DNA of 62,924 bases, counting the filler, from Octopus bimaculoides (lineage: Eukaryota), in NCBI RefSeq assembly GCF_001194135.2. It is 4 parts of 4 records of this genome, joined end to end, with 100 filler letters (N's around TTAATTAATTAA, not from the genome) between each part and the next. Parts side by side here need not be neighbours in the genome. Positions count along the whole stretch, not along the records: positions 23,720 to 37,979 come from NC_069008.1; 3 more parts are not named here. One strand, 5' to 3'. A program made the position numbers and the translations under genes. This document shows positions 3,960 through 37,610 of the stretch, in pieces. The notes under the pieces are model-generated. The model was not told where the DNA came from. It ran no database searches and worked only from the letters and a program-made list of their open reading frames with translations. Positions within the stretch are counted from its first letter, which is position 1. Each line of letters opens with the position of its first letter.

Positions 3960-5420
3960 TTAAATGTACACTAGAGGAATGGAGTTGCAGCAACAAGGAA
4001 TACATGTTTGCTATTTCAAGAATCTGACAAGAACAGAAAAATAAAAACCCATTTAAACAACTGCTACATGCTTATAGTACAGATGTATTTATAAAGGATT
4101 ACAAGATAGTATGAAACTGATCTGTCTAAACACCCCAACTTCAATTGTACCAGTGATACATGAAAAACAATTGCAAGCTCCAGCTTATCTGACTTTTGAA
4201 TCAACAGATAAAGTTGACATTCAAATGTCAGATCAGAATGAAAATTGAGAAGAGGAAGCAACAAGACACTGTGAATAGCTAGCAAGAGTTTGATGACCTT
4301 GTAACAAATTAGTATCTCACTAAATATGGTAAAGGGTAGTTGGTATTCAAATTAAATGAAAGGAATCTACTGGATGCAAAGGTGAAAATTTCTAAGAAAT
4401 GAACAAGGTTTGCAGCTTTGTCTTATTTCCACTTATTGTCTGAGTTGCTGGGCTTCTATACTGATGTAGGAGGCATGTTTGAAGTGACTGGTTTTAGACA
4501 CTCCTGTGATGAATGGCATTTGTTAATTGATATATCTATGAAAGCTTGAGAACAGTAGTTCTACAAAAGAGCAATCATTAGTCATCTATATTTGTTAGTT
4601 ATTGAAAGAAGAGTACAAAAATATTAAAGGGTTGCTCAAATATGATGATTCTAGTGAGATACATATATTGATTTCAAGCTGTTGGGATTCTTGTTTAGGT
4701 TGCATGGTGGATATACAAAGAACACTTGGTTTTTGTGCTTGTAGATTAGCAGAGGTAGAGAAAACAATTGTGCAAAAGGAAAATAGTATAAAAGATCAGC
4801 CCTGTAGATGAGCATCCAAAATGTATAGCTCAAACTCTTGTATCTGAGGAGAAAATCCTTCAGCCTCTGCTACACATAAAACTTTGTTTGAGAAAACAAT
4901 TCTTCATTGCCTTAGATTGTAATAGTGAAGTCTAAGTCAACATATGTGTGATGTTTGGAATGTTGTCTGATGCAAAATTGCTGTTGGTGTATTTGTTGGA
5001 GTACAGTTGAAGCAGATGCTTACATCCAAAACTCTGGATACAAAAATGACAGTGGTGGAAGAGAAAAACTTGAAATGTATTCAAGAACATTTTTCAATGG
5101 ATTTTCTGGCAACAATAAGGGGAAGAATTAAACAGATCTTACTGAAGAACTGATTGAAAGTCACAAAAGCATTGGAGTAAATGTCACTGAAGTTGCACTA
5201 TTTGTTCTCTCACTTGGAATTCTTTCTACCAAATCTTAGAGCTGTATCAGAAAGGCACAATGAATGATTCCAACACAACATACAATTCATGGTGAAGTGA
5301 TACTGGGGTAGGTGAAATGAAACAATAATGAGGTGATGGGCAATTAAGTTTGGGATTTGTTTTGAGAAGAATGTAGAGGTTACAAAAGACAACGATGGTC
5401 CAACGTTCACTTCGGTGCTT
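3960..5420 (+). mobile_element. Highly degenerate DNA transposase, Chapaev3/CMC-like
   Basis: Manual translation across stops and frameshifts gives remnants such as DEWHLLID, LKEEYKNIKGLLKYDD, LHGGYTKNTWFLC and MSLKLHYLFSHLEFFLPNLRAVSERHNE. These match recalled motifs WRLFIDSSK, GGYTKxxCFLC and MSLKxHFLxSHLDFFPxNLGAVSDEHGERFHQ. The superfamily name is from memory. Confidence 0.55.
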
Positions 5421-6440: not shown

Positions 6441-8214
6441 AAATAAGGGAATAACATCATGATGTATATATTTTCTTTGTTTTCCTTAACATTAATTTCA
6501 TTTCAAGTCTTCTGGTAGATGCAAAAGCACAGCCATACATGCTCAATCTCACTTTAAAACATATTTCAAACAATGAAAAGAGCTAAATTAAGAAAATAAA
6601 GCAATGTGTTGCTCTATTTCCACAAGGAAAGAAATAGAAATCCTGATTGTCATTATGCATTTCCTTCCACCCAGAATAGCTGGTTATATTTAAGAGGCCT
6701 TAAGAGGGCAGCTGTAATTGAAGAGGATTCTATGGAGAAAACATCAAAATGATAGTTGGGAATTAAGTGGGACTGCCATAGTAATAATAATGCTGAAAAC
6801 TAAGATCAATGTTGTAGCAGCTATTATCCATTGGGGTCATATACAAAAGAGGGAATAACATTAAGGAAATTTTATTTGCTTGGGGGGAATGACTAATTGA
6901 TAAGAGGAGGAGTGTATAACAGCTTAATCAATTGAAAAGTGGAGATTGAACAGGAATAGCAAAAAAATTGCAGCTTTGCTGAATTTATTGCTATAACTGC
7001 AGGCATATCAAAACTGAAAGGAAGACTGAAAAACTAATTAAATGATGATAATGACGAGGATGATGGCAGAGATTATGATGATGAAAACAACAATAATAGT
7101 GATGATTATTTAAATTAACTAGTAAAAGCTCTCATGGGGTGGTATACGCCAGACTGTAGCTATGCAGGGGTTCAATTTCAAAGTTGCTTAGCAGAGGATG
7201 TCACTTCTAGATATGAAGTGATGTAAGGAAAGGTCATCATTGTTTGTCTCAGTGTTTGTCTATCTGTTGATTATTGGCTTATTGTTTATAACAAATAGTG
7301 TCAAAAGAACATGACTTATAAAGCCTGCTATTTCATTTGATTCCTGATTGGAATGAACTAAGAAGAAAATACATGGTTGTGTTTTAAAAGTTCATGTACC
7401 ATCTTCATTGCTGTCATCGTTGTCATCGTCGTCGTCATCGTCGTTGTCATCATCATCATTATCATTATCATCATTTTACATCCATTTTCCATGCTACCAT
7501 GCATTGAATGGTTCATCATTGTTAGTGTTGATGATTTTTATCAGTTATAAAATCATTCCCAAGATCCTTTGTGATTTGCCACAGAGAACACAAACAGTAC
7601 TCCATTAACACTTACACTTTATTTTAAAGTAGGATTGGAAACTCTCAGAACATTAGTAGATTAATAGATTTTGGAGAGTTAATGTTCCAAACTAAACATT
7701 ATGGACTAATGAATAATATAAAAAAAATCATTCTCGAATGTAGTCATTTATTGCAATATGATGCACACACACACTCACACACATATTATGTGTATGGGCA
7801 TGTGTGCATTTCTTTTACTAATACACATCAGTGAAAAATGTAAACATTGGCAAGGAGACAAAGCACACACACACACACAAACAAATAACAGTGCTTTTCA
7901 AATAAGTCTCTTGAGGTGTTTGTTCAGCATCAAGTTAGGAACTCCTTTGATATATTTGCCATGAGAAATGCATTGAATCTGTGACTGGCCAATCAAAAAC
8001 CTGTATAACAATAAAATTTCAGTTCTTCACAAAATATTTATTGTTTATATGATAAAATCAGATACGATGGCTGGATAAAGAAAAACAGGAAAATGAGAAG
8101 AAAGTTCTTTTCATAATGGTGGTTGAGAACTAAAGTTTATTTCATGATGTAATTATGTATTCATGCCTCCGAGAGGAAAAAGTTTCTGTGAAAGTGACCA
8201 GAGTGAGGTTATAT

Positions 8215-11260: not shown

Positions 11261-12754
11261 ATTAAAACTAATGTTGTATAAGCAAATGGTACTTCTTAGT
11301 AATTAACTTCAATAAATTATTTTTAAATAGCTACTTGTTCGTGCTTACTTGTCAGCAATATTGTGCACTGGGTAATTAGTGATTTTCTCTTTACTCTTTT
11401 GGTTTGTATTAGGAAGTCAATGCCTTGAATAGAAAGGGTAATAGGACTAAATCTAGTCCTGAGTTGTATCCCTTGCATGCTGAACTTAGTATTGTGTTAA
11501 TAATTAGGCTAATATTTATTCATTACTATATAATTATGCCTAATTAGATTGTTGATGCTTCCTACACTAAATATGCTACTGCTAATTCAACTGAATACCA
11601 TGGGATATTTAGTGTAATATAATACTACTTCTATCAAATATATTGATATGTACTTCTATGTGAAAATGTTATTATATGTTAATGAATATTTTCACTGTGG
11701 AGTTTACAACAAACTAATTAACTATTTTCAAAACAGTAAAAATATTAAGACAATTAACAAAATGGTTATTGCTGCAGGGAGCAAAAGTGCTACAATAACT
11801 GAAAAAAATTTTTCTTTGTGATATTATTAAACACTTTAATATATACTTCATAATATGAGACATTAACTTTGGTGCAATATCATTGCCTGAGTTGTCATTC
11901 ATATATATTTTTTATGTTAAAATGAGATTGAGTAATAACATTACTAAATACAGCTGGATTTAGTAACTTTAAGCAAGATGTAAGGTGTGTATGAAAATGT
12001 GTGAAATATAAACAGCATTCTGAAATAAATATATATGTATATATNNNNNNNNNNNNNNNNNNNNNNNNNNNNNNNNNNNNNNNNNNNNNNNNNNNNNNNN
12101 NNNNNNNNNNNNNNNNNNNNNNNNNNNNNNNNNNNNNNNNNNNNNNNNNNNNNNNNNNNNNNNNNNNNNNNNNNNNNNNNNNNNNNNNNNNNNNNNNNNA
12201 TATATCAGTTAAATTTTAAAATTTAAAATTTACATGTTGGGTATGTCCCTAGAAGTATGCCGACAAACACGTTCACTGCTTGGCCTCATCAGCAATAATT
12301 ACACAATTGTCGCTGGATCTACATCAGGAATACCTTAGTGTACGTTGAGTATGACAGAAACGATAGAGGTGGAAAATGGAATATGTGAGAAACTTTGTTG
12401 ATCAAAACGATCGTTTCAACACATCCTGCATCACTCTCTCGCTGGTGGGAAACTATACAATTAATTTCGGGGATCCCACGGTGCAGAGGCATCTCATCAG
12501 GTGATGTACTAATGTACCTCGTTGCATAAGCAATGTTTCGTTTATTCAGATTCCCTAGAGCACGTTATTAGTGGTCATAGCTTAAATACATTGAAAAGAA
12601 GTGACTAGGAACAGGTTTAGTTGCAAAGCTATAGACACAAACAGGAAGTAAATTAAGAAGAAAAAATACAAAGAACGAGGAAAATAACACATATAATAAA
12701 GTAAAAGTAAGTAAACCATTAAGTGTGTCAGTACTCATCATACTGTTAGTCGTT

Positions 12755-26983: not shown

Positions 26984-28426
26984 TTATTTGTCATAATGAA
27001 GGAAAGCAAAAGATTGACGTCCAGGAATAATTCCAAAAACCATAAAAGAATTTTCTGAAACATCCAAACCAAGAACTTCACAAACTTCATTATCATCCCA
27101 TCTGAGGAGTAAATATTTTGGATTATCTTTTAATCTCAGGATTTCAATTTTTTTATATGTTTCCTCTTCAATATGTCGAGGTATTTCGTAAATATTGTTT
27201 CTTCTATCTGTTATATAAACACATTCACCAATTGTGATTAGACGACGTCTTGTAATATAATAATCCAGACTAATATATATTCTTTTTATTATTCTTATCC
27301 TCCTCACCAAAGACTTTTCCCTGAACCATTCCACAAAACACCAACCATTCCACCTTCCAGACTACTCCTTCTCCCTCCTCAAAACAACAACATCACCAAA
27401 AGATGTGACTCCCACATCATCTACCACCGAATCTCCCTCCAACCTTAAATATCTCCACGTCTCCCCCCAACACACTTCATCTTTACATTTCCCATCTTTC
27501 ATATCAACCACATCCACATAATAAGGGTCAAAGATGTCGGGGTCTTTCCAATAATAGTAAACCTTGTTGTTTTCCCATTCTCTTAGGTATTCCTCTTCTC
27601 TCTCTTCTTGAGTTAGGTCTCTAATATAATGACCACCACACACGAGTTGATTGTCATTGTATTTATAAATCGTGTTGTAGTATTTCTCAGTTCTGATGGT
27701 TTTTAAACAACAGAGATCCCTGTTGAAGACCCTCATTTCTCTCCCAAAGGCGACAATGAAACATTCATCTGTCTACCAACATATGTCCAGTGGTGGTTGT
27801 TGTTGTTGAAGTATGTCCACTGTTGTTGTTGTTGTTGTTCTGATTAATGTGACACTTTCTCGAAATATCAACACACTCACATTCTCATTTAACTTAATTA
27901 GTCTACTGTTCCGGTCCCTAATGTCCATCAAATCATAATTAACAGGTTCCTCAAATGCAGGAATGGTAAAAGGGACCATTGCTGTTCTATATGGAAGTCT
28001 CCTCACTGATATTTCATCAATTCCTGCATTACTAATCTCTGCTATGTAATTCCCACATCTCACCTTTAATCTACCTTTACTAATTATTTCACCTGATTTA
28101 CCTCTTCTTCCTCCATCTCCTCCACTGTATTTCAATTTATCAATTAATTCATTACTGAATATTTCCTTGTTCGTTTCAGATATAATGGAAGGGAAACGAA
28201 GACCGGAATCAAGATTTGATAACGACACAGATTCCAGAATGTTCATTTGGTCCCCATCAATCTTTATGCAATGACATTCAATCAATTCAATATGTTGACA
28301 CCAGTAAATACCCCCCACTTTTCTCCATATTACACCATAAGGGATGAGACTTGGCCAAACTTTGAATTTCTGCAAATCTTTTCCATTCAGTTGAAATATT
28401 TCGTTTCTTTTAGGAACCGTGGCCAT
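26984..28426 (-). pseudogene. Intronless 481-codon frame, possible NHL/beta-propeller-like protein, with two in-frame TAG (codons 218 and 355)
   Basis: The ORFs at 27773.., 27362.. and 26984.. are in one frame: ...PPLDICW*TDECFIVAFGREMRVF... and ...VLRREKE*SGRWNGWCFVEWFREK.... ATG is at 28426 (context ATAATGG), TAA at 26984-26986 and ATTAAA at 26964-26969. The fold is inferred from repeated short beta-strand-like motifs only. Confidence 0.75.
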
Positions 28427-28585
28427 TATGTNNNNNNNNNNNNNNNNNNNNNNNNNNNNNNNNNNNNNNNNNNNNNNNNNNNNNNNNNNNNNNNNNNNNN
28501 NNNNNNNNNNNNNNNNNNNNNNNNNNNNNNNATGCATGTGAGATCTTTATGACTTGTGCGAGATTTCACTGTTATTTCTAGAACC

Positions 28586-29238
28586 GATTTTTCCCTCATA
28601 ACTTTCAGGATAATCGATATATATTGGTGAAATTTTATAGAAATACCGTTCAAATGGTACAGATTACGATTATAAAGAAATTTCTGGGGAAAATGTTTTC
28701 CGAAGGGATGAGGAGAGGACTATCGGAAATTACACACGATCCGTTTATGCTCATAAATTTCAGGATCTAGTTTAGCACCTGGTCACTAAAACGAAAAAAA
28801 ACAAAAAAAAAACAGTCTAGTAGGTGTGGAAAAAAAAANNNNNNNNNNAAAAAAAAAAAAAACGGATAGTGGGAACTTTACACTCTTCGGAAAACATTTT
28901 CCCCGCAAATTTCTTTACAATCGTAATCTATGCTGTTTGAAAGGCGCTTCTGTAAAATTTCATTAAAAGATAACTATTTTCCTGAAAGTTTTGAAGGAAA
29001 AAATCGGATCGTGTGAATTTTCCGAAAGTCCTCTAATCCCACCCACCCCTCGTTCGTTTGTTCAAATTTTTCCTTACATATTCGTTTTCTACACGTTCTT
29101 GTACACCTATTAGACTGTTTCTTTTTTTCCGTCTTGGTGACTGGGTGCTAAAGTAGATCCTGAAATTTATGAGCATAAACGGATCGTGTGAACTTTCAGA
29201 CAATCCTCTCCCCACCGCTTCAGAAAACATTTTCCCCA
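28586..29238. repeat. Nested inverted and direct repeat block (transposon-like)
   Basis: Forward arm 28586-28830 has reverse-complement copies at ~28863-29000 and ~29100-29238. The motif cggatcgtgtgaa(c/t)ttt recurs at 28863 (variant), 29006 and 29180. Confidence 0.8.
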
Positions 29239-30199
29239 TATTAGTTTGTTGTGTGTTTTAGTTTCAGAAATATTCTGAAGCACACTCCAATCACTGAAAT
29301 GTTCTGTAAGAATCCAGTATTTTATTCTAATTTATGGAAGGTTTGTTTCTTGATATAAGTACAGATGTGTGCCGAAACCATTAGTAATTTGTTTTTTTAT
29401 TAACTTGTCCAAGGTGTCATGCAATTGAATTGAACTTGGAACCATCTAGTTGGGGTTAAAGCTTCTTACCACACAGCCACGTCTGAGCCAATTTTTGCAG
29501 TTTTTAGAAATAAAATAATTTTTCAAACTCATAAATTCCATTACAACAAAAACCAAAAAAATAAAAAGAAAAAATATCAAAACAAGATATTATCTTACAA
29601 TATTATTCTTTTTGTTTCTGTCAATTTTTGGGCGTTTCTGATGCTTTTGTTAGGGAGGTAATGATTGGAATGGAGACAAAGTCAGAAATAGTGGACTCAA
29701 TGAAAAAAGTAAAAGAAATACAATTGAAGGAGATAGATAGGGCGATGATATATATTCTACATTATGTGGTGACATGACCTACTAGATGTAAATTTCACTT
29801 TTCATTTATGNNNNNNNNNNNNNNNNNNNNNNNNNNNNNNNNNNNNNNNNNNNNNNNNNNNNNNNNNNNNNNNNNNNNNNNNNNNNNNNNNNNNNNNNNN
29901 NNNNNNNNNNCCCTACCCTGTCACAAAAATTGAAAAAAAAAAAAAATAGTGTACTAGGTGTAAAATAATGTGTAGTAAATGAATACAAAGGAAAGTACCA
30001 TTCGAGCATGATTGATGCCAGTGCCACCTGACTGGCCCCTGCACCAGTGGCACTTGAAAAGCACCCATTATACTCTCATCCAGTGATTTTAAGAGGTAGG
30101 AAAAAGATATAGTTTTAATATTATACTTTTACTTCATTTCACTTATACATGCAAAAACTCTAACATGTTTATTTTTAAATGAATATATCATTCGTTATC

Positions 30200-32219: not shown

Positions 32220-33218
32220 ATGGAAAAGAGTGACAAAAGTATACAATTGATTTCCCCTGAATCCATGACAACAGAGATGATATCATACGAATGTGATGTC
32301 TGTACAAAGTCCTTCCTTCAAAAAATTGACCTACTTAGGCACAAACGTATTCACACAGGAGAGAAACTGTATCATTGTGATATCTGTGGTAAATCATTCT
32401 CTTGCAGTAGTAAGTTATCTACACACAAACGTTCTCATACAGGAGAGAAGCCATATCATTGTGATATCTGTGGTAAATCTTTCTCTCAAAATAATCACCT
32501 AACTCATCACAAACGTATTCATGCAGGAGAGAAACCATATCATTGTGATATCTGTGGTAAATCTTTCTCTCAAAATAATCATCTAACTGATCACAAACGT
32601 ATTCATGCAGGAGAGAAACCATATCATTGTGATATCTGTGGTAATTCATTCTCTTGTAGTGGTAGCCTTACTGTGCACAAACGTACTCATACAGGAGAGA
32701 GACCATATCACTGTGATATCTGTGGTAAAGCATTCTCTCAAAATACTACCTTAAAGAAACACAAAAATATTCATACTGGGGAGAAACCATATCACTGTGA
32801 TATTTGTGGTAAATCATTCTCTCAAAGTATTCACTTAACTGAACACAAACATATTCATACAGGAGAGAAACCATATCATTGTGATATCTGTGGTAAAGCA
32901 TTCTCTCGTAATAGTGACTTAACTAGACACATACGTATTCATACAGGAGAGAAACCATATCATTGTGATATTTGTGGTAAATCATTCTCGGAAAATATTG
33001 CCTTAACAAAACACATACGTACTCATACAGGAGAGAAGCCATATCACTGTGATATTTGTGGTAAGCCATTCTCTGACAATACTGCCTTAGCAACACACAA
33101 ACGTATTCATACAGGAGAGAAACCATATCATTGTGATATTTGTGGTAAATCATTCTCTCAAAATAGTAACTTAATGAGGCACAAACATATTCATATTAGG
33201 GAGAAAGGAAAAGGGTAG
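32220..33218 (+). CDS. Tandem C2H2 zinc-finger protein, 11 fingers, 332 aa, with no recognisable effector domain
   Basis: 11 repeats of [23 protein letters not shown] with TGEKP/AGEKP linkers in an intact ORF. This is typical of the expanded cephalopod C2H2 family. Confidence 0.95.
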
Positions 33219-33422: not shown

Positions 33423-34177
33423 CTAGCAGAGGCACCTGGCGTTGCTCGGGAATGAAATTGTTGCTTATATTCTTGAAGAAAAAAAGACAAAATATGCTGT
33501 ATAGAAATTTGAGAGGACATTCTGTAGATGGACTCTCAGATGAATGATGGCTGGGCGCTTCTCATGAATGGGGAAAATTGAAGATGTGCCAAAAAGCCTC
33601 ATTGGTACTTGGAAACTTTTACGAAAATTAAAATGGGGATTAAATGAAAAAAATGATTTACGTGAATATCCTCACAAGAGTAATTGAAATAAATGGCGAT
33701 TGTGGNNNNNNNNNNNNNNNNNNNNNNNNNNNNNNNNNNNNNNNNNNNNNNNNNNNNNNNNNNNNNNNNNNNNNNNNNNNNNNNNNNNGCGCATACACAC
33801 GTGTGTCTTTGTAAATATGTTTGTATACATTTATGTATGTGTGTGTTTGTAAGAGACAGAGTGTGAGTGAGTCAAGGGGTGTGTGTGTGCATGTGTATGT
33901 AGTATTTACTCTCTCTCTCATACACACTCACACACAAAATAGAGAGTGAAGGTTTTTGCCGTTGTTACGTCAATACCGGAAGTTGACATTGAGGAACCTT
34001 TTTAAAGAAGTGAATCTTAAATATAAAGCAATATTATTTATTAAAAAATCAAATGAAGAGCCTAAGTTTTATCCGAGGTCAAATTATTCACGCATCACAA
34101 GTAAGGAAGCATTTGGTGAAGTCGATTTCACGTGAAAAGCGATTACACACACATCTTTGTTTTATATATAGTATAGA
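33423..34177 (-). mobile_element. Non-autonomous Helitron inserted in the ZNF 3' region
   Basis: 5' end A|TCTATACTATATATAAAAC at 34177 and 3' end CCCGAGCAACGCCAGG...GCTAG|T at 33423, inserted between A and T. The paralogous block at ~25213 shows the empty site (acaata|tcagtgtc). Confidence 0.85.
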
Positions 34178-34454: not shown

Positions 34455-35490
34455 TCAAGAAAGTTCATCCAACTGTAAATAACAGCTAAAAAAAAAAACA
34501 GTCACAATGAATGGATTAATTTGTATACATGACCTTCTGAAAGCCAACAAACTGCTGTGTAGTAGAAGTTTCTGAAAATGTTCTCCCCTTTCTTCACAAA
34601 TGTAAGCAAATAATCTTGATTTAAGAAGTCTACTTTTGATGTAATTGACCATTTGAACCACTTCGTTTATAACTCTTCGTAAATCTTCGTAGCTATAGGT
34701 GCAGGAGTGGCTGTGTGGTAAGTAGTTTGCTTATCAACCACATGGTTCCAGGTTCATTCCCACTGCATGGCACCACTATTGCCTTGTGAGTGGATTTGGT
34801 AGATGAAAACTGAAAGAAGCCTGTCGTATGTATGTGTCTGTGTTTGTCCCCCCCCCCCNNNNNNNNNNNNNNNNNNNNNNNNNNNNNNNNNNNNNNNNNN
34901 NNNNNNNNNNNNNNNNNNNNNNNNNNNNNNNNNNNNNNNNNNNNNNNNNNNNNNNNNNNNNNNNNNNNNNNNNNNNNNNNNNNNNNNNNNNNNNNNNNNN
35001 NNNNNNNNNNNNNNNNNNNNNNNNNNNNNNNNNNNNNNNNNNNNNNNNNNNNNNNNNNNNNNCCCCGTAACTTAGTGGTTCAGCAGAAGCAACTGATAGA
35101 ATAAGTACTAGGCTTACAAAGAATAAGTCCTGGGGTTGATTTGCTCAACTAAAGGCACTGCTCCAGCATGGCCACAGTCAAATGACTGAAACAAGTAAAA
35201 AAAAAAAAACGAGGAAGAAATCACAGTTTGTACAATTAGTGCTTTGTGATGCAAAAATTGCTAAAATTGTAAAAACCTTTTGCTGAACCTACTATTGAGG
35301 GTGTGCCGTTTGTGCATATTCCTACACAGTTTAACCATAAATTATTTTCCTTCGTGAAGGAATTTAAAGCTTTAAGATTGTCTTCACCTCTAGTTCTCAA
35401 TGGAAGTTCTAGACAAGACAAGAATTGTCTTTTAAATCTTTTCATACATAACACTTCTTCATGTGATTTCTTCCATGGTGCTATTATCTA
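34455..35490 (-). mobile_element. hAT Buster/ZBED5-like transposase fragments split by a SINE
   Basis: FLSCLELPLRTRGEDNLKALNSF...CVGICTNGTPSIVG (35236-35454) and VVQMVNYIKSRLLKSRLFAYICEE...LLLHS (34455-34680). Confidence 0.8.
34698..35210 (+). mobile_element. tRNA-derived SINE (family A), with a central gap
   Basis: Head ggtgcaggagtggctgtgtggtaag...ggttcattccc (A/B-box-like) and tail ccagcatggccacagtcaaatgactgaaacaagtaaaa. Confidence 0.85.
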
Positions 35491-35897: not shown

Positions 35898-37610
35898 AAT
35901 TTCTTTATTAAGCATAAAGCCCTAAACACAGATGCGGACACCACAAGGACAGACAAGACCACAGTGGGGACAAAAAACATAAAACGAATGTAAATGGGAT
36001 GAAATTATATAATAATGAAAAAAATGAAAATGGCCACACGGGCCCCACTCCCATGCGGTACCATTTGAACCATTATATGTACTATCTACAATTGTTCTTT
36101 TTTCCTACTTCATTACCTTTATTTTCCTAAAAATAACATCATTTAACATACATTATTTTTTCCTCTTCACCAGTAATATCTCTCAGATTCACTACTGGTG
36201 GCAACACCTTGAATTCTACCTCCACTCCTGGTGGGTTAACGCTATCTCCACACATCTCTTTCAATTTTCTGTAGTTTTCCTCTTCTATCAATATTGCCTT
36301 CACATCCTCTGCGAAGACGTATGAAGGCATCTTCACTCTTACTATTGAATTAAACTTAATAATCTCTTTTTTTTCTGTTTCAACATTCTTTGGGTATGTC
36401 ACATAATACCACACTCCATCTCCTCCTCGTATCTTCTTTCCTTTATCTTGTACTTTTTGTTCTCTTTTTCCTTCTTCTATCCTAAATAATCTCTCCAACT
36501 CTCCTTCCTGCACTTGTATTTCCGAATCCTCCTCCACTGGAACAACCGCTATCTTTATTGCTAACTCCACTTTCTTTTTACTTTCCCTTTTTTTATTCTT
36601 TCTTCCTGATCACCTTCACAGTTTCTTTTCTTACCTTTTCTCTCTTCTTTTTCTGCTTCTCTGGCAGAGAACTCATTCCTCTGCTCATTCTTCTTTTCTT
36701 TTTAACCATAGTAAATCCATTCTCTGTTTCTTCTTCTGTTACTATGACCTGGTCCACACTCTCCTGTCTCTCCACATGTTCTCTTTGGGTGCACCATGCC
36801 TTCATGTGGCCCCTCTCTCCACTTGAGAAACATATCGGCGGCCTTCCCTCTACACTGACTCTCAATCTTGCATCTTCTGGCAGTACAATCTCATCCACCA
36901 CTGTTCAAATCCTCCGTAGTTGCCTGAATCGTCAATTCAATACCGTATCCCCAGTAGTTTACTTTTTGGGTCCTGGTAGCCTTCAAAACCTTCCCATCCT
37001 TCATATCATATGTTATTGCTGTTATCAGCCATTCTTCCTTTAATTCGGGTGGCCCCTTACCCACTCGCACTTTGGTCACACGTTTGCCGCAGTACAAAGG
37101 CAGGAGCATCCATTCTTCTGACCTTATAGCCTCTGTGGAGTGCTTTATTGCTTCTTCCTCTGTTGTGAAGCGCACCTCCACAGTGGCGTATTTTCTCCCT
37201 CTCGTAATGTAAGTTGTAAGTCTTTTCAATTCCTTGATACTCTCTTCTATGGCTTCTATCAGCGCAACTTCTATTTTTCTTGTAGTTGTCTTCACGGTTT
37301 TAAATATCACAGTTCTTCTTAACACAATGGCTGAAATCTCTTCAGGTGGCGTTAGTTTCAGAGTGTTACTTTCTTTTGGGATTAATTTTTCACTCTCCTT
37401 CATCTTTCGAGGCTCCACCTTTATCTTGCGGACCTCCAACTCTTGCACGTTCACTCCTCTGCTCGTTGCGGTTGCATAACTTGGGCCTCCCTCCTGCATC
37501 TTCTCCATTTTCCCACAATGGGGAACAAAACAACAATTAACAACAGCAACAGTTCTAACAACAATTTAAATCAAATAACAATGCAATAAATATTTCAACA
37601 TAAACTCATT
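35898..37610 (-). mobile_element. Complete 1713-bp ORF1-only (HAL1-like) non-LTR retroelement with a degenerate gag-like ORF (37508 to 36139, two frameshifts)
   Basis: Flanked by a 13-bp TSD, cagacgaaatacc (35885-35897) and cagacgaacgacc (37611-37623). The ORF has an N-terminal SYATA, an RRM-like YATVEVRFTTEEEA and a knuckle CFSSGERGHMKAWC (second C to S). AATAAA lies 8 nt from the 3' end. There is no RT or endonuclease between the TSDs. Confidence 0.8.

What the first reader, a model, noticed from the sequence alone, without database searches (positions are those of the whole stretch)
26984..28426. 481-codon intronless gene broken only by two amber (TAG) codons: candidate for A-to-I stop repair
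Seen: three separate ORFs are one uninterrupted frame of 1443 nt with no frameshift. It has a good start (ATAATGG), a TAA stop, ATTAAA 15 nt later and then a (CTT)n tail. The only defects are TAG at 27773-27775 (W*T) and 27362-27364 (E*S). Known: UAG is the preferred ADAR triplet, a single A-to-I edit makes it UGG (Trp, as at the HDV amber/W site), and coleoid cephalopods recode extensively by ADAR. Inference: the locus could be an editing-dependent gene (giving DICWWTDE and EKEWSGRWNGW), a readthrough or amber-recoded foreign insert, or simply a young pseudogene with TGG>TAG mutations. A GT-AG micro-intron could remove the second stop (45 nt), but the equivalent 36-nt excision at the first stop recreates TGA, so splicing does not explain it. 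The product looks like a divergent beta-propeller with no family I can name. The strand is purine-rich, unlike the flanks.
Basis: partly seen in the sequence, partly recalled or inferred. Interest (0 to 1): 0.8.

Follow-up and report, generated by a model that had tools for sequence, protein, structure and literature searches.

The report
Truncated pseudogene of octopus propeller family
The two-amber-codon reading frame is real, but it is the gap-truncated tail of one decaying copy of an octopus-only, multi-copy beta-propeller gene family, so it is most likely an ordinary pseudogene and not an editing-repaired gene.

Summary
The minus-strand frame 28426-26984 exists as described: 481 codons, two in-frame TAGs, a TAA stop, ATTAAA and a (CTT)n run. 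It is not a complete gene. The "start" ATG lies 5 nt from a 100-N assembly gap and is an internal Met in every relative. The window holds only the last ~30% of an intronless, 1,600-1,900-aa protein found only in octopods (Octopus vulgaris, O. sinensis, O. bimaculoides, Argonauta hians).

DNA alignment with four paralogues shows:
- Stop 1 is TGG>TAG, at a Trp invariant across the family.
- Stop 2 is GAG>TAG, in a variable loop. A-to-I editing there would give a non-ancestral Trp.

The copy shows no coding constraint:
- pN/pS is about 1 or higher in every segment.
- Lineage-specific substitutions fall 24/23/19 over the three codon positions.
- 66 neutral substitutions predict 2.4-3.5 stops; 2 are seen.
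- Its in-frame indels all lie in trinucleotide repeats.
- Sister copies are broken by frameshifts and deletions.
- Neither TAG sits in unusual RNA structure.

Best reading: a truncated, young pseudogene (about 0.8). Editing-dependent rescue is not excluded, because no RNA data were available, but I put it at about 3%. Interest is low. The uncharacterised, fast-evolving family is the more interesting by-product.

The parts
26984..28431 (-). C-terminal ~482 codons of one copy of an Octopoda-restricted, intronless family of 1,600-1,900-aa multi-beta-propeller proteins. The frame is open to the gap edge. The copy carries two nonsense codons.
   Evidence: frame. (homology; aligns to aa 1135-1625 of P0025). 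(about 90% nt identity and collinear with four paralogue loci).
28432..28531 (.). 100-N assembly gap that cuts off the 5' ~70% of the gene.
   Evidence: N runs. (..SH-IMATVPKR.. in all relatives). (no N-terminal homology anywhere else in the piece).
27773..27775 (-). Stop 1: TAG derived from TGG by a G>A transition. It replaces a Trp that is invariant in the whole family (motif D-I-C-x-W-T). It lies in the most confidently modelled beta-strand core.
   Evidence: TGT TGG TAG ACA against TGT CGG/TGG TGG ACA in the paralogues. (W in all 15 relatives, including Argonauta). (pLDDT about 87-91 for residues 211-260).
27362..27364 (-). Stop 2: TAG derived from GAG (Glu) by a G>T transversion, in a variable, indel-rich loop. 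A-to-I editing here would give Trp, not the ancestral residue.
   Evidence: GAG AAG GAG TAG TCT against ..AAG GAG GAG TTT.. in the paralogues. (E, K, L, R or a gap at this column). (pLDDT about 54).
27227..27616 (-). Hypervariable segment of the ORF (codons 271-400). It contains stop 2.
   Evidence: 65-70% aa identity here against 86-90% in the rest. (pN/pS about 2; both pS and pN are raised).
26964..26986 (-). Family-conserved 3' end: the TAA stop codon, a 14-nt spacer and an ATTAAA poly(A)-signal-like hexamer.
   Evidence: The stop codon and the ATTAAA hexamer are identical in all five copies; in the spacer, L001, L002a and L003 are identical to the window and L004 differs at 2 positions.
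26897..26957 (-). (CTT)n microsatellite, 20.3 units. Its first units are shared by all paralogues. Homology between the window and the other copies ends here.
   Evidence: TRF. (alignment). (the blastn matches end inside the microsatellite, at 26894-26948 depending on the locus).

Best explanation
The segment is the 3' third of a dead or dying paralogue of an octopod-specific gene family. It is not an editing-dependent gene.

The family:
- It encodes very large (about 1,600-1,900 aa), single-exon proteins built of beta-propeller-like repeats.
- Besides a few conserved orthologue groups, it has a fast-turnover subfamily. This subfamily multiplies by segmental or tandem duplication among C2H2 zinc-finger genes and is concentrated on one chromosome in O. 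vulgaris.
- Copies of that subfamily drift without detectable coding constraint and pick up disabling mutations.

The window copy:
- It has two ordinary point nonsense mutations: TGG>TAG at an invariant Trp, and GAG>TAG in a variable loop.
- Its 5' ~3.4 kb is missing at an assembly gap. That part is either unassembled or truly absent.
- The frame looks clean for two reasons. The copy is young, at about 10% nt divergence from its relatives. Its few indels also arose by slippage in trinucleotide repeats, which keeps the frame without any selection.

What is shown: the homology, the ancestral codons, the neutral substitution pattern, the truncation, and the broken sister copies.
What is inferred: that the copy makes no functional protein, and that the TAGs are true, fixed genomic bases.
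For: 1. Family and truncation.
- Hits at E = 1e-248 go only to Octopus proteins.
- A profile search of 1.84 billion representatives finds 26 proteins. The significant ones that were looked up are all octopod.
- The window aligns to aa 1135-1625 of the 1625-aa P0025, right up to the 100-N gap.
- No upstream part is found elsewhere in the piece.

2. Ancestral codons.
- TGG and GAG, from the five-copy DNA alignment.
- The Trp is invariant in 15 relatives.

3. Neutrality.
- NG86 dN/dS is 1.46-2.34 for window against paralogues.
- By segment, pN/pS is 0.86-0.97 (codons 1-270), about 2 (271-400) and 1.6-4 (401-480). None departs significantly from neutrality.
- The 66 window-specific substitutions split 24/23/19 over codon positions (chi-square p = 0.73).

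4. Number of stops.
- 3.6-5.3% of possible substitutions create stops, so 66 substitutions predict 2.4-3.5 stops. Two are observed.

5. Indels.
- The window's gaps of 12, 9, 3 and 3 nt all lie in GGA/GAT, CAA and GAG/GAA repeats.

6. Sister copies are visibly decaying.
- L001 and L003 each have one frameshift splitting the about 1,850-codon ORF.
- L004 has several frameshifts plus a deletion.
- L002 has many frameshifts.

7. No ADAR-type context.
- Folding of 251 nt around each TAG gives z = -0.17 and -1.71.
- There are no long inverted repeats.
Against: - There are no frameshifts in 1,443 nt despite about 10% divergence. Stop 1 is exactly the kind of G>A change that A-to-I editing would reverse, at a residue that must be Trp.
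- Coleoids edit coding RNA heavily and show an excess of restorative editing (PMC6881472). Premature-stop correction by A-to-I editing is real in fungi (PMC7306014, PMC10776026).
- No RNA data could be examined, so transcription and editing are untested.
- The assembly is a gappy draft, with five N runs in 14 kb. The TAGs could therefore be errors or alleles.
- dN/dS at or above 1 also fits diversifying selection on a functional family.
Confidence: 0.8

Rival explanations
1. Editing-dependent gene. The transcript is made, and ADAR converts both UAG codons to UIG (read as Trp). This would give a functional propeller protein, analogous to fungal premature-stop-codon correction or the HDV amber/W site.
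For: - Both stops are TAG. UAG is the favoured ADAR triplet (established knowledge).
- Stop 1 replaces a family-invariant Trp by a G>A change, so editing would be exactly restorative.
- Coleoids show abundant restorative recoding (PMC6881472).
- Premature-stop correction exists in fungi (PMC7306014, PMC10776026).
- No frameshift in 1,443 nt.
Against: - Stop 2 comes from GAG. Editing would put a non-ancestral Trp in a variable loop.
- There is no purifying selection on the copy in any segment.
- The number of stops equals the neutral expectation.
- The ORF lacks its first ~70% in this assembly.
- There is no significant local dsRNA and no inverted repeat.
- Sister copies die by frameshifts that editing cannot fix.
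- TGG>TAG is among the commonest routes to a stop.
Confidence: 0.03
2. The gene is intact in the animal. One or both TAGs, and the 5' truncation, are artefacts of a draft short-read assembly (consensus errors, or collapse of ~90%-identical paralogues), or they are a segregating null allele.
For: - Five N runs in 14 kb, one of them abutting the ORF.
- The family has many paralogues at about 90% nt identity that could be collapsed or mis-joined.
- Intact long members exist, for example P0025 at 1625 aa.
Against: - The neutral substitution pattern covers the whole copy, not just the two sites.
- High-quality O. vulgaris copies of the same subfamily also carry disabling lesions.
- Single-base consensus errors that produce exactly two stops and no indels are not the usual short-read error mode (inference).
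Confidence: 0.1
3. The unit is, or travels with, a mobile element. The window copy would be a 5'-truncated insertion ending in a simple-repeat tail, so the stops are ordinary post-insertion decay of a repeat.
For: - The family is multi-copy, intronless and dispersed.
- Copies L003/L004 share only the unit: from about 400 nt upstream of the ATG to a short stretch past the (CTT)n.
- The window shares only the ORF through to the (CTT)n.
- pN/pS among copies is about 1, as for dead repeat copies.
- Retroelement fragments are nearby.
Against: - No reverse transcriptase, transposase or integrase domain in 1,229-1,913-aa members.
- L001, L002 and L003 share several kb of 3' flank, which indicates segmental duplication.
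- Conserved orthologue groups on other chromosomes are at least 90% identical between Octopus species.
- The tail is (CTT)n on the sense strand, not poly(A).
Confidence: 0.05
4. The three sub-ORFs (254+, 124 and 116 aa) are expressed as separate short proteins, or the stops are bypassed by translational readthrough.
For: The sub-ORFs 27736-27362 and 27334-26984 have ATG and GTG starts respectively.
Against: - The pieces would cut propeller blades apart.
- No such products are on record.
- No constraint.
- No known readthrough context was examined or is evident.
Confidence: 0.02

Closest known systems
Uncharacterised octopod proteins: O. vulgaris CAI9743080.1 (P0025, 1625 aa), O. bimaculoides XP_014788244.1 (LOC106882172, P0001) and XP_014776406.1, Argonauta hians GAB1597371.1
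   Same: - 79% aa and about 90% nt identity to the nearest members, collinear over all 481 codons.
- The same TAA stop and ATTAAA hexamer, a near-identical spacer between them, and the same (CTT)n onset.
- The same single-exon organisation.
   Different: - The window copy has TAG in place of the invariant Trp, and TAG in place of Glu.
- It lacks the first ~1,134 codons.
- It is about equally distant (~81%) from the O. bimaculoides copy and from the O. vulgaris cluster.
Fungal premature-stop-codon-correction (restorative) A-to-I editing, e.g. PUK1 and 71 'pseudogenes' of Fusarium graminearum (PMC7306014, PMC10776026)
   Same: In-frame UAG codons in an otherwise open frame. At stop 1, UAG>UGG would restore the ancestral Trp.
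   Different: - The fungal system is ADAR-independent and specific to the sexual stage, and its genes are otherwise constrained and complete.
- Here stop 2 is not restorative, constraint is absent, the ORF is truncated, and no RNA evidence exists.
Restorative ('harm-permitting') ADAR recoding in coleoids (PMC6881472)
   Same: A G>A substitution at a conserved site in a coleoid coding sequence (stop 1) is the class of change that model describes.
   Different: - That model concerns missense sites in expressed, conserved neural genes.
- Median restorative editing levels are below 2.5%, far too low to rescue a nonsense codon, let alone two.
NHL-repeat six-bladed beta-propellers (Pfam PF01436; Brat, TRIM2, TRIM3, TRIM71)
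   Same: - An all-beta, propeller-like AF2 model. The Brat NHL domain (1q7f) is among the Foldseek matches.
- The weak sequence hits in family members go to NHL proteins.
   Different: - All sequence hits are below threshold: 18.5 bits against a cut-off of 20, and E = 0.3-0.9.
- WD40 and clathrin propellers match the model equally well.
- No RING, B-box or coiled-coil domains were detected.

Membership tests
Octopoda-restricted giant multi-propeller protein family (unnamed) | Significant full-length sequence similarity to family members | tested here: met
   E = 1e-248, 79% identity over 100% of the 480 aa. About 90% nt identity over ~1,500 nt to four loci.
Octopoda-restricted giant multi-propeller protein family (unnamed) | Uninterrupted single-exon ORF of about 1,600-1,900 codons | tested here: not met
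   Only the last ~482 codons are present, up to a 100-N gap, and they carry two in-frame TAGs.
Octopoda-restricted giant multi-propeller protein family (unnamed) | Invariant D-I-C-x-W-T motif | tested here: not met
   The window encodes D-I-C-W-stop-T. All 15 relatives have W at that position.
Octopoda-restricted giant multi-propeller protein family (unnamed) | Conserved 3' end (TAA, ATTAAA 14 nt later, onset of (CTT)n) | tested here: met
   The TAA stop and the ATTAAA hexamer are identical in window, L001, L002a, L003 and L004; in the spacer, L001, L002a and L003 are identical to the window and L004 differs at 2 positions.
A-to-I premature-stop-correction / restorative editing substrate | The edited codon (UGG, Trp) equals the ancestral residue | tested here: inconclusive
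   Met at stop 1 (TGG ancestral). Not met at stop 2 (GAG ancestral; the column is variable).
A-to-I premature-stop-correction / restorative editing substrate | The rest of the ORF is complete and under purifying selection | tested here: not met
   pN/pS is 0.86-4 in all segments, and none is significantly below 1. Substitutions split 24/23/19 over codon positions. The ORF is truncated.
A-to-I premature-stop-correction / restorative editing substrate | Double-stranded RNA context for ADAR around the edited A | tested here: inconclusive
   Local folds give z = -0.17 and -1.71, with no long inverted repeat within 3 kb. Distant or intronic partners cannot be excluded.
A-to-I premature-stop-correction / restorative editing substrate | A>G difference between RNA and DNA at the stop codon in the same individual | not testable with these tools
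   No read data were available. No product of this locus, edited or unedited, is on record.
NHL-repeat beta-propeller (PF01436) | Pfam NHL match at or above the gathering score | tested here: not met
   No NHL hit in the window product. The best hit in a relative (P0033) is 18.5 bits against a cut-off of 20.
NHL-repeat beta-propeller (PF01436) | Six-bladed propeller fold | tested here: inconclusive
   AF2 mean pLDDT is 57 (residues ~165-480 are all-beta, with stretches above 85). Foldseek finds propellers of several classes with TM 0.3-0.54. The second model reached only pLDDT 44.
Processed (retro-copied) pseudogene | Poly(A) tract at the 3' end and loss of the parental introns | tested here: not met
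   The tail is (CTT)n, it is shared with the intact paralogues, and the parental genes are themselves intronless.

The most novel reading that the evidence does not exclude
A coleoid counterpart of fungal premature-stop correction. The copy would be transcribed, and ADAR would edit UAG>UIG at 27774, restoring the family-invariant Trp, and at 27363, creating a new Trp in a hypervariable loop. The protein would then be made only where editing is high, for example in neural tissue. A separate and less exotic reading also survives: the fast-turnover subfamily, with its hypervariable loop segment and pN/pS of about 2, is a diversifying recognition-type gene family unique to octopods.
Probability: 0.03. 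Interest if true: 0.8.

Novelty: new member of a known kind. Interest (0 to 1): 0.15.

Why it matters
As found, it matters little. It is one more decaying duplicate in a lineage-specific gene cluster, and it illustrates how a clean frame with only TAG stops can arise by neutral drift when indels fall in trinucleotide repeats.

If the low-probability editing reading were true, it would be the first animal gene that depends on ADAR to remove premature stops. That would bear on the debate over whether cephalopod recoding is adaptive or merely harm-permitting.

The side result may be more useful. Octopods carry an undescribed family of giant, intronless, multi-propeller proteins. It has a few conserved orthologue groups, and it also has a rapidly duplicating, rapidly diverging cluster embedded among C2H2 zinc-finger genes. 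Current annotations split or fuse many of these copies wrongly.

Tried and rejected
- **Pfam.** Nothing significant for the window product, for the upstream 1,229-aa ORF or for six long relatives.
- **PDB sequence searches.** Only sub-threshold NHL hits.
- **Second AF2 run (P0001, alignment A2).** pLDDT 44, no gain.
- **Missing N-terminal part.** tblastn found nothing beyond the gap, even at E up to 10.
- **Exact-sequence look-ups.** The window's ZNF ORF, the two sub-ORFs and P0001 are not on record. The source record and any transcript-derived product therefore could not be identified.
- **Rfam.** No matches in the piece.
- **Micro-intron removal of the stops.** Rejected, because paralogues are collinear coding sequence through both sites.
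- **Foreign or amber-recoded insert.** Rejected, because every relative looked up is an octopod nuclear gene model.
- **TAG bias among lesions of other copies.** No such pattern. Those copies are broken mainly by frameshifts, and the stops tblastn reports lie in shifted frames.
- **In-frame indels as evidence for selection.** Rejected, because all lie in trinucleotide repeats.

Full report
**Observation**

The reverse strand of 28426-26984 reads as one frame of 481 codons.
- The only internal stops are TAG at 27775-27773 (codon 218, DICW*TDE) and TAG at 27364-27362 (codon 355, REKE*SGRW).
- The frame ends in TAA at 26986-26984.
- ATTAAA follows after 14 nt, at 26969-26964. A (CTT)n run of 20.3 units lies at 26957-26897.
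- The sense strand is purine-rich.

So the sequence-level description holds. It is not chance: the W-substituted product matches octopus proteins at E = 1e-248.

The claim of a complete intronless gene with a good start does not hold.
- A 100-N assembly gap (28432-28531) begins 5 nt upstream of the ATG, and the frame is open to the gap edge.
- In every relative this Met is internal (..CFTQESH-IMATVPKR..).
- The window aligns to residues 1135-1625 of the 1625-aa O. vulgaris protein P0025.
- Nothing resembling the missing 1,134 codons lies anywhere else in the piece.

**What the family is**

- A word-indexed search of 5.8 billion proteins returned 24 hits. All 24 are Octopus proteins.
- An exhaustive profile search of 1.84 billion representatives returned 26 hits. 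The significant ones that I looked up are O. vulgaris, O. sinensis, O. bimaculoides or Argonauta hians. One marginal hit is a fish Ig protein at E = 2.6e-4, which I take to be spurious.
- Full-length members are 1,478-1,925 aa.
- In O. vulgaris the gene is a single exon. Locus L003 carries ORFs of 1,229 and 677 codons that overlap in different frames. That is one unit of about 1,850 codons split by a single frameshift.
- Two orthologue groups (P0029/45/46 and P0033/48/49) each fall within a single 90%-identity cluster that includes O. vulgaris, O. sinensis and O. bimaculoides. They lie on large chromosomes, so conserved members exist.
- The copies closest to the window belong to a cluster on one 29-Mb O. 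vulgaris chromosome. These are 88-94% identical to each other at the protein level.
- L001, L002 and L003 share kilobases of flank, which indicates segmental duplication. L003 and L004 share only the unit itself.
- No Pfam domain reaches threshold in any member.
- The AF2 model of the window product is all-beta from about residue 165, with stretches of pLDDT 87-91 (mean 57). It matches WD40, NHL and clathrin propellers in the PDB.
- The only sequence-level leads are sub-threshold NHL hits.

I call it a beta-propeller-repeat family with a possible NHL affinity. NHL membership is not shown.

**The two stops**

I aligned the window DNA with four paralogue loci at about 90% identity.
- **Stop 1:** the window has TGT TGG TAG ACA where the paralogues have TGT CGG/TGG TGG ACA. 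This is a G>A transition in a TGG codon. That Trp is invariant in all 15 relatives examined, including Argonauta and both conserved orthologue groups (motif D-I-C-x-W-T). It sits in the best-modelled strand region.
- **Stop 2:** the window has GAG AAG GAG TAG TCT where the paralogues have ..AAG GAG GAG TTT... This is a G>T transversion in a GAG (Glu) codon. The site lies in a loop where relatives differ in both residue and length.

A-to-I editing would therefore restore the ancestral residue at stop 1. At stop 2 it would insert a non-ancestral Trp.

Both sites are flanked by collinear coding sequence in the paralogues, so micro-introns play no part. The TAA stop and the ATTAAA hexamer are identical in all five copies, the first CTT units are shared, and only L004 differs, at 2 positions in the 14-nt spacer.

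**Is the copy under constraint?**

No constraint is detectable.
- Nei-Gojobori dN/dS for window against paralogues is 1.46-2.34. Among the paralogues it is 0.93-1.94.
- By segment, window-versus-paralogue pN/pS is 0.86-0.97 for codons 1-270, about 2 for the hypervariable codons 271-400, and 1.6-4 for codons 401-480. No comparison departs significantly from the neutral ratio.
- The 66 substitutions unique to the window relative to four paralogues fall 24/23/19 on codon positions 1/2/3 (chi-square p = 0.73).
- Of all single-base changes to the consensus sequence, 3.6-5.3% create stops. So 66 neutral substitutions predict 2.4-3.5 stops, and two are present.
- The absence of frameshifts is the only feature that hints at selection. 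The window's four length differences (12, 9, 3 and 3 nt) all lie in GGA/GAT, CAA and GAG/GAA trinucleotide repeats, where slippage preserves the frame.

Sister copies are visibly decaying in ways that no editing could repair.
- L001 and L003 each have one frameshift.
- L004 has several frameshifts and a deletion of about 130 codons.
- L002 has many frameshifts.

**ADAR context**

- Folding 251 nt around each TAG gives z = -0.17 and -1.71 against dinucleotide shuffles.
- The only inverted repeats nearby are (CAA)n/(GTT)n-type low-complexity matches.
- This does not exclude long-range pairing, but it gives no support.
- No product of this locus, with or without read-through, is on record in the protein collections. 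That is weak evidence either way.

**Comparison with what is known**

- Premature-stop correction by A-to-I editing is established in filamentous fungi. Examples are PUK1, where two adjacent stops become Trp, and 71 'pseudogenes' in F. graminearum (PMC7306014, PMC10776026). That system is ADAR-independent and acts on genes that are otherwise intact.
- In coleoids, restorative editing at G>A-substituted sites is over-represented, but the median level is below 2.5% (PMC6881472).
- The window copy fits the pattern only in that stop 1 is restorative. It fails on stop 2, on constraint and on completeness. The defining RNA-DNA difference could not be tested.

**Verdict**

- The segment is most likely a gap-truncated, recently inactivated paralogue, that is, an ordinary pseudogene. 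It belongs to an octopod-specific beta-propeller gene family that undergoes rapid birth and death among C2H2 zinc-finger genes (confidence about 0.8).
- Assembly error or a segregating null allele takes about 0.1.
- A mobile-element reading of the unit takes about 0.05.
- Editing-dependent expression takes about 0.03.
- Separate expression of the three sub-ORFs, or translational readthrough, takes about 0.02.
- Interest is low (0.15). The family itself, and especially its hypervariable segment, is a modest lead for separate study.

Noticed in passing
window 32220-33218 (+): An intact 332-aa ORF encoding 11 tandem C2H2 zinc fingers, with an 84-nt period (10.2 copies by TRF). This shows that the propeller-family copy sits inside a ZNF cluster, as in O. 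sinensis contig L002.
   Followed up: partly
window 26801-26896 (-): Directly after the (CTT)n lies a degenerate C2H2 finger (CTVCDANFKQFSGLKSH*STH) with an in-frame TGA. It is a ZNF pseudogene fragment.
   Followed up: partly
window 36139-37508 (-): Three consecutive purine-rich ORFs of 205, 102 and 143 aa with no Pfam match. 'CFSSGERGHMKAWC' looks like a decayed CCHC knuckle, so this is probably a retroelement gag-like remnant (inference).
   Followed up: partly
window 28432-28531, 28839-28848, 29811-29910, 33706-33788, 34859-35062: Five N runs within 14 kb. This is a gappy draft scaffold, so single-base calls and joins around the multi-copy gene deserve caution.
   Followed up: yes
L001 2735-7956 and L003 6418-12034 (O. 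vulgaris OX597841.1): Each full-length family unit of about 1,850 codons is split by a single frameshift (near L001 5770 and L003 10030). Each is annotated as two separate 'hypothetical' genes.
   Followed up: partly
window 27227-27616 (-), codons 271-400: A hypervariable stretch. It has 65-70% aa identity against 86-90% in the rest, pN/pS of about 2, and raised pS as well. This could reflect diversifying selection or a mutation/conversion hot spot. Pairwise tests are not significant.
   Followed up: partly
L002 3963-10042 (O. sinensis VCDQ01009858.1): Gene model P0023, 'zinc finger protein 431-like', joins a fragment of the propeller family to C2H2 exons. It is probably a chimeric annotation across a pseudogene and a ZNF gene.
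   Followed up: partly
L001 ~8000-8050, L002 ~4770-4820, L003 ~12080-12130: Just past the microsatellite, three paralogue loci share GGCTTC(A/G)CC(C/T)GGGAATCGAACCTGCATCGCAT. Its reverse complement resembles a tRNA T-arm, so this is probably a tRNA-derived SINE. The resemblance is recalled from memory and was not tested.
   Followed up: no
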